Below are positions 5,322 through 12,675 of a stretch of 64,000 nt of DNA, one piece after another. Each line of letters begins with the position of its first letter. The first letter of the stretch is position 1. Origin of the DNA: Ranitomeya imitator (Eukaryota). The notes below the pieces were generated by a model. That model was not told the DNA's origin. It saw nothing but the letters and a program-made list of their open reading frames with translations, and made no database searches. A program made the position numbers and the translations under genes. The stretch lies in contig NC_091285.1 of NCBI RefSeq assembly GCF_032444005.1, positions 11,532,001 to 11,596,000 on the forward strand. Reading direction: 5' to 3'.

Positions 5322-8300
5322 TTAGTAGAGACCCAGGGTCCTGAGCATCATCCTCTCCACGCCGGTCATCTGATAACCATTCTTGTTAGCTGGAAATGTA
5401 AAGCATGGCATTAGAAATGTGTAAATCCTGCGCTAAGCCTCGATATCTAGGACAGCGCGGTGTGAACCAATGTGGCCGACATTGCTGCTCCTACAGAGGT
5501 CACCACTTACATGTTCATCATGGAACGTCTGCCAATTAACTGCTAAGTTAGGAAGAATTCCCAGAATGCACTGAATTAAATATGACCCCGCGGGGGCGGC
5601 GTACAGTGGTGTGATGTCATCAGGAGGCGGAGCTTGTACCACAACTATATATCATCTAGACTACATCAGGTCTATATATATGACCGGAAGAGATTAATGT
5701 CTTACCGTATGCAGAGCTGCTGAATCCCCACCTGTAGAGGGAGAGACACAGGATTAGATACACAGCTCATCTGCAGTATCACACAGGATAGGATTAGATA
5801 CACAGCTCATCTGCTGTATCACACAGGATAGGATTAGATACACAGCTCATCTGCTGTATCACACAGGATAGGATTAGATACACAGCTCATCTGCTGTATC
5901 ACACAGGATAGGATTAGATACACAGCTCATCTGCTGTATCACACAGGATAGGATTAGATACACAGCTCATCTGCTGTATCACACAGGATAGGATTAGATA
6001 CACAGCTCATCTGCTGTATCACACAGGATAGGATTAGATACACAGCTCATCTGCTGTATCACACAGGATAGGATTAGATACACAGCTCATCTGCTGTATC
6101 ACACAGGATAGGATTAGATACACAGCTCATCTGCTGTATCACACAGGATAGGATTAGATACAGCAGCTCAGCAAGCCACAAGTCCTATACTAACCAGTCC
6201 CAGCATCCGTTGGGGTTGGACAAGTTGGACTTGGCCTGAGGATACAGGATGATGAAGTTGTTCAGATCGGCCACCTGGTTGTACCCGGTGTATCTGGCAT
6301 ATTTGTCACCAAGTTTTTCCCTGTAAAACAAAAAGAAATGTGTCTTGTAATTATTCATCATCTGCACCGAAAACTGCTGTGATACCACAACTCCCAGCAT
6401 CCCCTAAAGGGGATGTGTCATCAAAAATCTAACTATTGTTTAGATGATGTGATGTCACAGCTCACCTCCTCCTCCTGTACAATGACTGATAACACCGCTA
6501 TATACAGTAGATAACACAGGATCCACCATTCACAATAGATGATGTCACAGCTCACCTCCTCCTCCTGTACAATGACTGATAACACCTCTATATACAGTAG
6601 ATAACACAGGATCCACCATTCACAATAGGTGATGTCACAGCTCACCTCCTCCTCCTGTACAATGACTGATAACACCGCTATATACAGTAGATAACACAGG
6701 ATCCACCATTCACAATAGATGATGTCACAGCTCACCTCCTCCTCCTGTACAATGACTGATAACACCTCTATATACAGTAGATAACACAGGATCCACCATA
6801 CACAATAGGTGATATCACAGCTCACCTCCTCCTCCTGTACAATGACTGATAACGCCTCTATATACAGTAGATAACAGAGGATCCACCATTCACAATAGAT
6901 GATGTCACAGCTCACCTCCTCCTCCTGTACAATGACTGATAACGCCTCTATATACAGTAGATAACACAGGATCCACCATTCACAATAGGTGATATCACAG
7001 CTCACCTCCTCCTCCTGTACAATGACTGATAACGCCTCTATATACAGTAGATAACACAGGATCCACCATTCACAATAGGTGATGTCACAGCTCACCTCCT
7101 CCTCCTCCTATACAATCACTGATAACACCTCTACATACAGTAGATAACACAGGATCCACCATTCACAATAGGTGATGTCACAGCTCACCTCCTCCTCCTG
7201 TACAATGACTGATAACACCTCTATATACAGTAGATAACACAGGATCCACCATTCACAATAGGTGATATCACAACTCACCTCCTCCTCCTGTACAATGACT
7301 GACAACACCTCTATATACAGTAGATAACACAGGATCCACCATTCACAATAGGTGATGTCACAGCTCACCTCCTCCTCCTGTACAATGACTCATAACACCT
7401 CTATATACAGTAGATAACACAGGATCCACCATTCACAATAGGTGATGTCACAGCTCACCTCCTCCTCCTGTACAATGACTCATAACACCTCTATATACAG
7501 TAGATAACACAGGATCCACCATTCACAATAGGTGATGTCACAGCTCACCTCCTCCTCCTGTACAATGACTGATAACACTTCTATATACAGTAGATAACAC
7601 AGGATCCATCATTCACAATAGGTGATGTCACAGCTCACCTCCTCCTGTACAATGACTGATAACACCTCTATATACAGTAGATAACACAGGATAGGTGATG
7701 TCACAGCTCACCTCCTCCTCCTGTAATGACTGATAACTCCTCTATATACAGTAGGTGACATTGGATCCATCGTTCGGCATAGATGATCACAGCTCACCTC
7801 CTCCCCTTCCCTTCACAATCCCCTTTGCCCAGATTACAGTTTGCCCAGTTTATACTTGGATACAAACATGGGGTCTCCGTCAGTCTTTTGCTTCTAATGT
7901 CACAATGAATAACATGAAGTACGAGTCCAACAAATCCTAAAGTCAGGGCTGTTCTCACCTTCCTTGCAGGCAGCCGTGGAAGACAATATGGAGTTTGCAT
8001 TCTGCAAAAAAAAAATACAAATCACTTAGAAGAAAGAATGGTAAAAAAGCTCAAACATCCCTGGTTATGGTTTAGGGGCAGAGGGACACAACTTGACCCT
8101 CACTTGTGCTGACCCTCGTGCTTCTTGGATCGCGGTTGCAGGCAGGAACTTCTATAATCAGGGTCCATTCTTTCATGCTATGCCCAACTCATTTATTTAA
8201 CGTGATTTTATAAAAAATGAGAACTTAGAAAACTAGAAAGTAGACCCTCAACCCATCCTACTTGCCATTTTTTTTAATAGTTTTTCTCATAATTTCAACC

Positions 8301-11300: not shown

Positions 11301-12675
11301 CTGTAAGCAACCACAAATACCAGAAATGACTACATTACTTATGAATGTTCAATAGTAATTAAATTAATCTTCTCCAAAAGGTAAATATAATGAATTCAAC
11401 CTGGAGTGTCCGTCGATAGCTTCCACCCAATGTCAACCCCCATTACCACAGAGATATAGGTGGATACGACTCTCACCATTCCATGCTGAGCCGCAACGTC
11501 GTACACAGTCTTGAGAGCTCCGGAACCGGTGATGTAGGATGCATAATATTCCTCCTGCTTTTTCACCACACCTAAAATAAACAGTAGTGGTTGTAGAACA
11601 AATGGGACCCACAGAAACCAATGGACACCCCTTTCAGTTCACTTGGCATCAACTTCAGATAAGGTTCCTCCACTTAGAAGTAGCTCCTCACATGCTGCTC
11701 CCATGAGCAACTATGCCGAAGGAAATACTCTAACTAAAAGTGGTGGTCAAGAACAGAAAAATCTGTCTGAAAATTTATAGAATACCCTATAAAATATACT
11801 ATAGACCCTTTATAGAACTTTGAGGGTCTACACATTGCCCATGCTAAAATTAAATGAACCAGCCCTGGTATCTTATCGAGGTTGATTGTGTATAGGCAGC
11901 CCTAAGACAATTAGGGGTTACCTCTTCCACTACAAGTAGATGATTGACTCCAATGGCGGACCTCCACGTGAATAGCAGATATTCCAGGGTATACACACAG
12001 CAAAAGTTGGTTACACATGGTTTGGTTGGGTCAAAGAAGACTAAAAATGGATCTATATTATTTTACTCACCTGGAACTACTACAGTATCACGTGTTCCAG
12101 AAAAGATGTACACTCTGCTGTTGGCGAGGTTGGACAAGGGGTCGAGGAGTCCACTGTTGGCGTAAGTTTGAGTCTTGGACTTCAATGTGGCAACGTTGAT
12201 GCTTGTGGGCAGTTTCATACAAGCATTAGTTGCAGTGAGCAAGTTTCCTTGTGCACAATAGTATGGTCCTATGGGGACATCGAAAGAGAAGGTATTGTCA
12301 GAAAGAACCTTACCTATATAATAGCACAACAGCGTGACGCTCCCTTTAAGGCTGATAAATAATTGAAGGAAATTCTTTGTACCTCCAGCAAAGAGGCCAG
12401 CTCCAATGACCCGTTTTGACTGGGCAACATGGAACTGGTTAGCCATGTAGGATCCCGAGGACAGTCCAGATACAGACAAAGCACTTTCGAGATTGTACTT
12501 GGCTGTCAAAATAAATATTAAGTTTAGGAAACGGTATTTAGAAGCAAAACCATTTCACTTCGGGTATTGAAATTGATTATTCCTTCCTTCTAAATACAGA
12601 CAAATATAACTTACCAAGCTTTGACTGTCCATAGCAGAGGCCAACCAGAGAGAGCAAGATGATGAAAGCCTTCAT
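5322..12675 (-). CDS. Secreted poly(3-hydroxybutyrate) depolymerase-like esterase, paralogue A (11 coding exons, 330 aa)
   Basis: Exons (minus): 12615-12675, 12383-12502, 12071-12268, 11477-11571, 11187-11300, 11064-11096, 10311-10419, 7959-8001, 6195-6320, 5706-5731, 5322-5389. All introns are GT-AG, phases are compatible, total 993 nt with no internal stop. Signal peptide MKAFIILLSLVGLCYG; SVSGLSSG (Ser35); FSGTRD (Asp121); AQHGMPTD (His156); LHIVFHGC; [18 protein letters not shown]; [10 protein letters not shown]. The motifs match, in order, those of fungal-type extracellular PHB depolymerase as I recall it (no database search run). Confidence 0.92.
5746..6170. repeat. 40-bp tandem repeat (acacaggataggattagatacacagctcatctgctgtatc), about 10.5 copies, in intron 9 of paralogue A
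   Basis: Near-perfect 40-bp periodicity. Confidence 0.97.
6445..7800. repeat. 90-bp tandem repeat, about 15 copies, in intron 8 of paralogue A
   Basis: gatgtcacagctcacctcc recurs every 90 bp (6541, 6631, 6721); produces the 30-aa repeating spurious ORF. Confidence 0.97.
8350..9800. repeat. Degenerate 19/38-bp minisatellite (ccagaaactgccaagacca-ctagatactaccaggacca) in intron 7 of paralogue A
   Basis: 38-bp period visible at 9003 and 9041, built from two related 19-mers; heavily diverged elsewhere. Confidence 0.85.
9836..10284 (+). mobile_element. Solo LTR (Gypsy-related) in intron 7 of paralogue A
   Basis: TG...CA ends and 5-bp TSD cactg/tactg. The 3' part (gggactgccctggag...cctatcctcacca...aaaaaccaggtagtc...ccacacccacc) matches the LTR at 16190-16345. 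Confidence 0.7.

What the first reader, a model, noticed from the sequence alone, without database searches (positions are those of the whole stretch)
5322..12675. Intact, spliced, secreted PHB-depolymerase-like gene in a vertebrate (paralogue A)
Seen in sequence: 11 GT-AG exons splice to an open 330-aa protein with a signal peptide, a G-L-S-S-G nucleophile elbow near the N-terminus (Ser35), Asp121, His156, a downstream HGC oxyanion motif, CWDWWG and eight mature-chain Cys. Established: this Ser-Asp-His-then-oxyanion order is the circularly permuted catalytic domain of extracellular PHB depolymerases such as Penicillium funiculosum PhaZ (triad Ser39/Asp121/His155, from memory). I know of no such gene in mammals; animal homologues I recall are mainly invertebrate. 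Inference: this frog may secrete an enzyme that digests microbial storage polyester from diet, biofilm or gut microbes into 3-hydroxybutyrate.
Basis: partly seen in the sequence, partly recalled or inferred. Interest (0 to 1): 0.93.

Follow-up and report, generated by a model that had tools for sequence, protein, structure and literature searches.

The report
Frog PHB-depolymerase gene, already annotated
This is a real, spliced and transcribed poison-frog gene for a secreted enzyme of the family that digests the bacterial storage polyester PHB, but RefSeq already names this exact protein and a 2026 paper already described the family in animals including chordates.

Summary
On the minus strand, 11 GT-AG exons (12675..5322) splice to a 993-nt reading frame of 330 aa. 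The protein has a signal-peptide-like N-terminus, G-L-S-S-G (Ser35), Asp121, His156, H-G-C (Cys254), C-W-D-W and eight mature-chain Cys. RNA-library contigs with no mismatches join exons 1-8 at exactly the predicted junctions and run on into exon 9.

The interpretation also holds. The protein passes NCBIfam NF050059, extracellular type-2 short-chain PHA depolymerase (362 bits, cut-off 280, end to end). Its only strong PDB match by sequence and by fold is the Penicillium funiculosum PHB depolymerase 2D80/2D81 (E 6e-49; TM 0.87-0.90), with triad and oxyanion residues aligned.

It is not new. [quoted passage not shown] Zeidler et al. (Nat Ecol Evol, Aug 2026) reported such enzymes in nine animal phyla including Chordata, and showed PHB degradation by sponge, earthworm, springtail and oligochaete homologues. 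No vertebrate enzyme has been assayed.

Added here: a second intact, transcribed tandem paralogue (37424..22882, 70% identical). A tree places lampreys, then salamanders, then frogs, with the A/B duplication inside frogs. No fish or amniote homologue appeared among the best 120 hits of either search.

The parts
12615..12675 (-). Gene A exon 1: ATG, signal-peptide-like N-terminus (MKAFIILLSLVGLCYG|QSKL)
   Evidence: RNA contigs reach 12704-12708, so the 5'UTR is about 30 nt
12383..12502 (-). Exon 2: nucleophile elbow G-L-S-S-G (Ser35)
12071..12268 (-). Exon 3: contains Asp121 (SGTRD)
11477..11571 (-). Exon 4: contains His156 (AAQH)
11187..11300 (-). Exon 5: invariant Cys167 and Cys178
11064..11096 (-). 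Exon 6 (33 nt)
10311..10419 (-). Exon 7: Cys239
7959..8001 (-). Exon 8: Cys245 and H-G-C (Cys254, the oxyanion-hole residue by alignment to Cys250 of 2D80)
6195..6320 (-). Exon 9: ends in C-W-D (the CWDW motif is completed in exon 10; Trp300 aligns to Trp307 of 2D80)
   Evidence: the loose end of the RNA contigs at 7958 matches its first 30 nt
5706..5731 (-). Exon 10 (26 nt)
   Evidence: supported by identity of the whole model to XP_069617980.1, no joint laid directly
5322..5389 (-). Exon 11 and TAA stop
12736..12743 (-). TATATAAA box about 30 nt upstream of the 5' ends of the RNA contigs
   Evidence: read; contig ends; inference
22882..37424 (-). Tandem paralogue B: 11 exons with the same phases, 328 aa, 70% identical to A, with GISSG, Asp, His, HGC and CWDW intact
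   Evidence: spliced RNA contigs with exact junctions for exons 1-8

Best explanation
Gene A is an ordinary, vertically inherited, intron-rich nuclear gene of a dendrobatid frog; the protein is identical to that of Ranitomeya imitator. It encodes a secreted single-domain serine hydrolase of about 314 aa, of the extracellular type-2 short-chain-length PHA depolymerase family. This is the same circularly permuted alpha/beta-hydrolase type as the Penicillium funiculosum PHB depolymerase.

Shown here: the gene model, its splicing and transcription, family membership by a curated HMM, the fold, and conservation of Ser35/Asp121/His156, the HGC oxyanion residue Cys254 and Trp300.

Inferred: after the signal peptide is cleaved, the enzyme binds polyester directly, because it has no separate substrate-binding domain. 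Ser35 attacks the ester bond, with the backbone amides of Ser36 and Cys254 acting as the oxyanion hole. The products would be 3-hydroxybutyrate monomers and oligomers that the animal can oxidise. The most likely substrate is PHB/PHV granules of ingested bacteria (detritus, biofilm, gut microbes), as was shown by assay for sponge, earthworm, springtail and oligochaete homologues.
For: The gene model has 11 GT-AG exons.
Spliced contigs with 0 mismatches in RNA-library runs match that model.
NF050059 e_dPHAscl_type2 scores 361.7 bits against a cut-off of 280, covering profile positions 9-302 of 305.
phmmer finds 2D80/2D81 at E 6e-49 with the catalytic residues aligned.
The AF2 model has pLDDT 96 and pTM 0.93. 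Foldseek ranks 2D81/2D80 first at E 3e-35 and TM 0.87-0.90, with the next hit at E ~2e-3.
D121 and H156 are invariant, and S35, H252, G253, C254 and W300 are conserved in at least 90% of 67 homologues.
dN between paralogues A and B is 0.20 with dS saturated, which is consistent with purifying selection.
Animal homologues degrade PHB in vitro (PMC13642032).
The vertebrate sequences form one clade that mirrors the species tree.
Against: No vertebrate member has been assayed. The tissue and life stage of expression are unknown because the run metadata are coded. Pfam PF10503 and related families also contain feruloyl, acetyl-xylan and other esterases, so substrate specificity cannot be read from the fold alone. 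According to PMC13642032, the polymer-binding surface residues are only partly conserved across animal homologues. Adult dendrobatids eat arthropods, not detritus, so any dietary role may be limited to larvae or may act through gut microbes.
Confidence: 0.7

Rival explanations
1. The protein is a family member by descent, but in vertebrates it acts as a broader carboxylesterase. It would work on other esters, such as dietary lipids or waxes, plant cutin or suberin, feruloyl esters or synthetic polyesters, and PHB would not be its physiological substrate.
For: Weaker matches to feruloyl esterase 8IY8 and to a thermophilic 'esterase, PHB depolymerase family' 8DAJ/9BYU. Pfam PF10503 is only just below its cut-off and covers only residues 244-308. 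Substrate-binding residues are only partly conserved among animal homologues (PMC13642032).
Against: The full-length match above the curated cut-off is to the type-2 PHA depolymerase model, not to esterase models. The only strong structural match is a proven PHB depolymerase. Trp300, which aligns to the substrate-recognising Trp307, is conserved. All animal homologues tested so far degrade PHB.
Confidence: 0.17
2. The enzyme has a non-nutritional role. It might be secreted in skin or mucosa to act on microbial biofilms or granules as a form of defence, or it might turn over the short complexed PHB found in animal membranes and proteins.
For: The tissue is unknown. Both paralogues appear together in the same RNA-library runs of several studies. 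The gene was retained as two copies throughout frogs.
Against: There is no direct evidence. PHB is intracellular in bacteria and is exposed only after lysis, which fits digestion better. The published animal cases are digestive.
Confidence: 0.1
3. The gene is an artefact: bacterial or fungal contamination of the assembly, or a recent horizontal transfer.
For: The family is overwhelmingly bacterial and fungal.
Against: The gene has ten spliceosomal introns with frog-type repeats and a Tc1 transposon inside the paralogue. Spliced transcripts exist. Orthologues occur in about 25 frog genera, salamanders and lampreys, in a tree that follows the species tree.
Confidence: 0.01

Closest known systems
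[quoted passage not shown]
   Same: Identical over all 330 residues to the protein spliced from this window. It is the same gene.
   Different: Nothing differs in sequence. The RefSeq name is automatic and carries no experimental support.
Animal PHA depolymerases (PHADs) of Zeidler et al., Nat Ecol Evol 2026 (PMC13642032)
   Same: Both are domain type 2 and about 330 aa, with a signal peptide and a conserved triad and oxyanion Cys. The paper lists Chordata among nine phyla and uses a frog silhouette in its Fig. 5. An Amphimedon queenslandica homologue is 43% identical to the frog protein.
   Different: The enzymes assayed were from a sponge, an earthworm, a springtail and a gutless oligochaete. 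The main text does not use the words vertebrate, frog or amphibian. Its supplementary species list could not be read.
Penicillium funiculosum PHB depolymerase, PDB 2D80/2D81
   Same: About 35% identical and colinear over residues 27-319. The single-domain permuted alpha/beta fold is the same (TM 0.87-0.90). Ser39/Asp121/His155/Cys250/Trp307 align to Ser35/Asp121/His156/Cys254/Trp300.
   Different: The frog protein lacks an 11-residue insertion before the NPNGCWDW segment and has small indels elsewhere. One enzyme is fungal and extracellular, the other animal.
Bacterial type-1 extracellular PHB depolymerases (NF050058, Pfam PF10503/TIGR01840)
   Same: They share the HGC...CWDW oxyanion segment. 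Frog residues ~230-308 match profile positions ~2-77.
   Different: The order is reversed: in type 1 that segment is N-terminal to the lipase box. Scores are far below the cut-offs (86 vs 150 bits; 51 vs 108 bits). The frog protein has no linker or substrate-binding domain.

Membership tests
Extracellular type-2 catalytic-domain short-chain-length PHA depolymerase (NCBIfam NF050059; PHA Depolymerase Engineering Database 'e-dPHAscl type 2') | Score above the curated whole-protein cut-off of the family HMM, over the full domain | tested here: met
   361.7 bits against a cut-off of 280, residues 27-323 on profile positions 9-302 of 305. Paralogue B class (P0329) scores 352.6 bits.
Extracellular type-2 catalytic-domain short-chain-length PHA depolymerase | Lipase box G-x-S-x-G N-terminal to the oxyanion-hole His-Gly-Cys (order Ser, Asp, His, then oxyanion) | tested here: met
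   GLSSG at 33-37, Asp121, His156, HGC at 252-254. The type-1 models match only the C-terminal residues 230-308 to their N-terminal positions, which shows the permuted order.
Extracellular type-2 catalytic-domain short-chain-length PHA depolymerase | Catalytic triad and oxyanion residue aligned with an experimentally defined member (2D80/2D81) | tested here: met
   S35/D121/H156/C254 align to S39/D121/H155/C250. The S39A position of 2D81 aligns to the first Ser of the lipase box. The residues are invariant or conserved in at least 90% of 67 homologues.
Extracellular type-2 catalytic-domain short-chain-length PHA depolymerase | Circularly permuted alpha/beta-hydrolase fold like 2D80 | tested here: met
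   The AF2 model (pLDDT 96) matches 2D81/2D80 at TM 0.87-0.90 and E 3e-35. No other chain scores below E 1e-3.
Extracellular type-2 catalytic-domain short-chain-length PHA depolymerase | Secretion signal | tested here: inconclusive
   The N-terminus MKAFIILLSLVGLCYG has the form of a signal peptide, and the alignment to mature 2D80 begins after it. No signal-peptide predictor was available.
Extracellular type-2 catalytic-domain short-chain-length PHA depolymerase | Hydrolysis of PHB/PHV polymer to 3-hydroxyalkanoate monomers or oligomers | not testable with these tools
   Shown only for homologues from other phyla (PMC13642032).
Bacterial type-1 PHB depolymerase / PF10503 Esterase_PHB | Score above the gathering or curated cut-off | tested here: not met
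   PF10503 22.0 vs 23 bits; NF050058 86.3 vs 150; TIGR01840 50.9 vs 107.85. These are related families, but the frog protein is not a member of them.

The most novel reading that the evidence does not exclude
Among vertebrates the gene may survive only in lineages whose larvae feed on microbes and detritus: lamprey ammocoetes and amphibian larvae. Frogs may keep two anciently duplicated, differently expressed copies. On this reading the pair would be a larval digestive adaptation that gives vertebrates direct, host-encoded access to bacterial PHB as a source of ketone bodies, and it would have been lost independently in jawed fishes and amniotes. My evidence does not exclude this. The vertebrate clade follows the species tree, the A/B duplication lies within frogs, and no fish or amniote appeared among the best 120 hits of either search. 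Tissue, life stage and activity remain untested, and absence from other vertebrates was not searched exhaustively.
Probability: 0.35. Interest if true: 0.5.

Novelty: already known. Interest (0 to 1): 0.27.

Why it matters
If the frog enzyme is active, vertebrates and not only their gut microbes can depolymerise bacterial storage polyester. That bears on tadpole and ammocoete nutrition, on the use of PHB as an aquaculture feed additive, and on what happens to PHA bioplastics when animals eat them. The general point was published in 2026 for invertebrates, with chordates listed and the gene already named in RefSeq. What remains open is narrower: activity of a vertebrate member, where and when it is expressed, and why only lampreys and amphibians seem to keep it.

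Tried and rejected
- Pfam on single exon translations gave nothing useful. The only hit was exon 9 to PF10503 at E 0.14, because the pieces were too short.
- The spliced protein had no reference of its own. I reached it indirectly: phmmer with the stop-free exon 2-intron-exon 3 read-through, then homologue searches, then cluster members, until an identical stored protein was found (P0326).
- Literature searches for the Xenopus, Rana and Spea LOC identifiers found nothing. Searches combining depolymerase, hydroxybutyrate and tadpole found only a table entry in PMC13696840, with no functional data.
- The supplementary species tables of PMC13642032 are not held. I could not confirm which chordate species it lists.
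- Run metadata are coded and carry no library or tissue description, so tissue of expression could not be determined.
- Earlier notes of this scan held nothing relevant.
- Contamination or recent horizontal transfer was considered and rejected (introns, transcripts, species-tree-like phylogeny).
- The YN00 dN/dS calculation failed because of saturation. Only NG86 was obtained, and its dS of 3.6 is unreliable.
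Full report
**The observation**

The gene lies on the minus strand. From stop-free segments and splice-site inspection I assembled 11 exons: 12675-12615, 12502-12383, 12268-12071, 11571-11477, 11300-11187, 11096-11064, 10419-10311, 8001-7959, 6320-6195, 5731-5706 and 5389-5322. Every intron is GT..AG. The exons sum to 993 nt and translate without a stop to 330 aa plus TAA.

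- GLSSG at 33-37 (Ser35)
- Asp121 and His156
- HGC at 252-254
- CWDW at 297-300
- eight Cys in the mature chain, plus Cys14 in the signal-like N-terminus

**Transcription**

Two RNA-library runs of 'organism A' and of an unlabelled 2025 study hold single contigs of 1101 and 1124 nt. They lie on the window with no mismatch and join exons 1 to 8 at precisely the predicted positions. Their continuation beyond exon 8 reads the first 30 nt of exon 9.

A run of a related species (95-99% alike) shows the same joints at high depth. The contigs begin at 12704-12708, about 30 nt downstream of a TATATAAA on the minus strand at 12743-12736. They rest on the reading frame and on identity to the RefSeq protein.

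**Identity**

A phmmer search with the stop-free exon 2-intron-exon 3 read-through found 1428 relatives. Homologue searches then named them. They are annotated 'poly(3-hydroxybutyrate) depolymerase-like' or 'uncharacterized' in:
- about 25 frog genera
- two salamanders
- lampreys
- a tunicate, amphioxus, hemichordates and echinoderms
- molluscs, crustaceans, annelids, a rotifer, a priapulid and sponges

A cluster look-up returned XP_069617980.1 of Ranitomeya imitator, which is identical over all 330 residues to my model. The window is therefore from that frog or a near-identical genome, and the gene model and its name already exist in RefSeq.

**Family and fold**

- NCBIfam NF050059 (extracellular catalytic domain type 2 short-chain-length PHA depolymerase) matches end to end at 361.7 bits against a cut-off of 280.
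- The type-1 models (NF050058, TIGR01840, Pfam PF10503) fall below their cut-offs. They match only residues ~230-308 to their own N-terminal positions. This shows directly that the order is permuted relative to type-1 enzymes.
- Against the PDB, the only strong sequence matches are 2D80/2D81, the P. funiculosum PHB depolymerase (E 6e-49, colinear over 27-319). Ser35, Asp121, His156, Cys254 and Trp300 fall on Ser39, Asp121, His155, Cys250 and Trp307, taking literature numbering as chain index + 20.
- An AlphaFold2 model built on 67 homologues has mean pLDDT 96 and pTM 0.93.
- Foldseek ranks 2D81 and 2D80 first (E 3e-35, TM 0.87-0.90). All other chains score E of about 2e-3 or worse with partial overlap.
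- Across the 67 homologues, D121 and H156 are invariant, and S35, H252, G253, C254 and W300 are conserved in at least 90%.

**Surroundings**

A second copy, paralogue B, lies 10 kb upstream in the same orientation (37424..22882).
- It has 11 exons with identical phases. Exon lengths are identical apart from 3-nt differences in exons 4 and 5.
- It encodes 328 aa, is 70% identical to A, and has all catalytic motifs intact.
- It is also transcribed and spliced as predicted, at lower contig depth than A in the run compared (X1).
- dN between A and B is 0.20 with dS saturated.

Gene A's introns hold large tandem arrays, and intron 1 of B holds a Tc1-type transposase remnant. This is the normal content of a frog genome.

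**Evolution**

A quick maximum-likelihood tree of 59 animal sequences, rooted on sponges, recovers a vertebrate clade with SH-aLRT 99. Lampreys branch first, then salamanders, then frogs.
- Copy A groups with one copy of Leptodactylus, Engystomops, Rana and others.
- Copy B groups with the second copy of Leptodactylus, Rana, Pyxicephalus and with a Xenopus laevis gene.
- Bombina and Rhinophrynus also have two copies.

The duplication therefore postdates the frog-salamander split and is old within frogs. Deeper nodes are poorly resolved. No teleost, shark, reptile, bird or mammal protein appears among the best 120 hits of either search. Invertebrate proteins at 45-50% identity do appear there. 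This suggests loss in those lineages but does not prove it.

**What is already known**

Zeidler et al. (Nat Ecol Evol 2026, PMC13642032) report domain-type-2 PHA depolymerases in 66 or more animal species of nine phyla, Chordata included. They show by heterologous expression and GC-MS that enzymes from Olavius algarvensis, Amphimedon queenslandica, Lumbricus rubellus and Folsomia candida release hydroxybutyrate from PHB and PHB/PHV. They argue for vertical inheritance from the metazoan ancestor and a dietary role in animals that ingest microbe-rich material.

A frog silhouette is credited in their Fig. 5, but the main text never mentions vertebrates, frogs or amphibians. I found no functional study of an amphibian member; the only mention is a table entry in PMC13696840.

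**Mechanism**

*Shown:* a secreted-type, single-domain, type-2 PHA depolymerase homologue with an intact catalytic apparatus, under constraint and transcribed.

*Inferred from the 2D80/2D81 work and the 2026 assays:* Ser35 attacks the ester bond, with Asp121 and His156 as the relay. The backbone amides of Ser36 and Cys254 stabilise the oxyanion. Trp300 positions the neighbouring ester. The polymer binds on the enzyme surface without a separate binding domain, and 3-hydroxybutyrate is released.

The physiological substrate is most probably PHB of ingested or resident bacteria. The tissue and life stage are unknown.

**Verdict**

The finding is an already annotated gene of a family recently described in animals. 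Only the vertebrate-specific questions remain open: activity, expression site, the restricted distribution and the role of the two copies.

Noticed in passing
window 22882-37424 (-): Tandem paralogue B of the same gene. It has 11 exons and encodes 328 aa with intact catalytic motifs. It is transcribed and correctly spliced, at lower contig depth than A in the run compared (X1). It is 96.6% identical to a Ranitomeya variabilis protein.
   Followed up: yes
window 31110-31139 (-), exon 9 of paralogue B: The RNA contig of run X1 continues from exon 8 into exon 9 but reads ...GCCAGATAC where the window has ...GCCAGATTT. This changes Phe to Tyr, as in copy A. It could be an allele or an assembly switch between the two copies.
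   Followed up: no
window 36440-37141 (-): A Tc1/mariner-type transposase remnant (HTH_Tnp_Tc3_2, E 2e-25) lies inside intron 1 of paralogue B. The surrounding 35.9-37.3 kb shows very high RNA contig depth at 95-99% identity, as expected of a multicopy element.
   Followed up: partly
window 5750-6170, 6449-7692, 8426-9161: Three intronic tandem arrays in gene A: 40 bp x 10.5 (99% alike, ending 19 nt from exon 10), 90 bp x 13.8 (96% alike), and a degenerate 19/38-bp array.
   Followed up: partly
window 26016-26185: An assembly gap or masked run of 170 N lies inside the long intron between exons 9 and 10 of paralogue B. It was left untouched.
   Followed up: no
window 23139-24367 and 51034-52525: These stretches are open in several reading frames on both strands. 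They are probably low-complexity or simple-repeat sequence and gave no family match.
   Followed up: no
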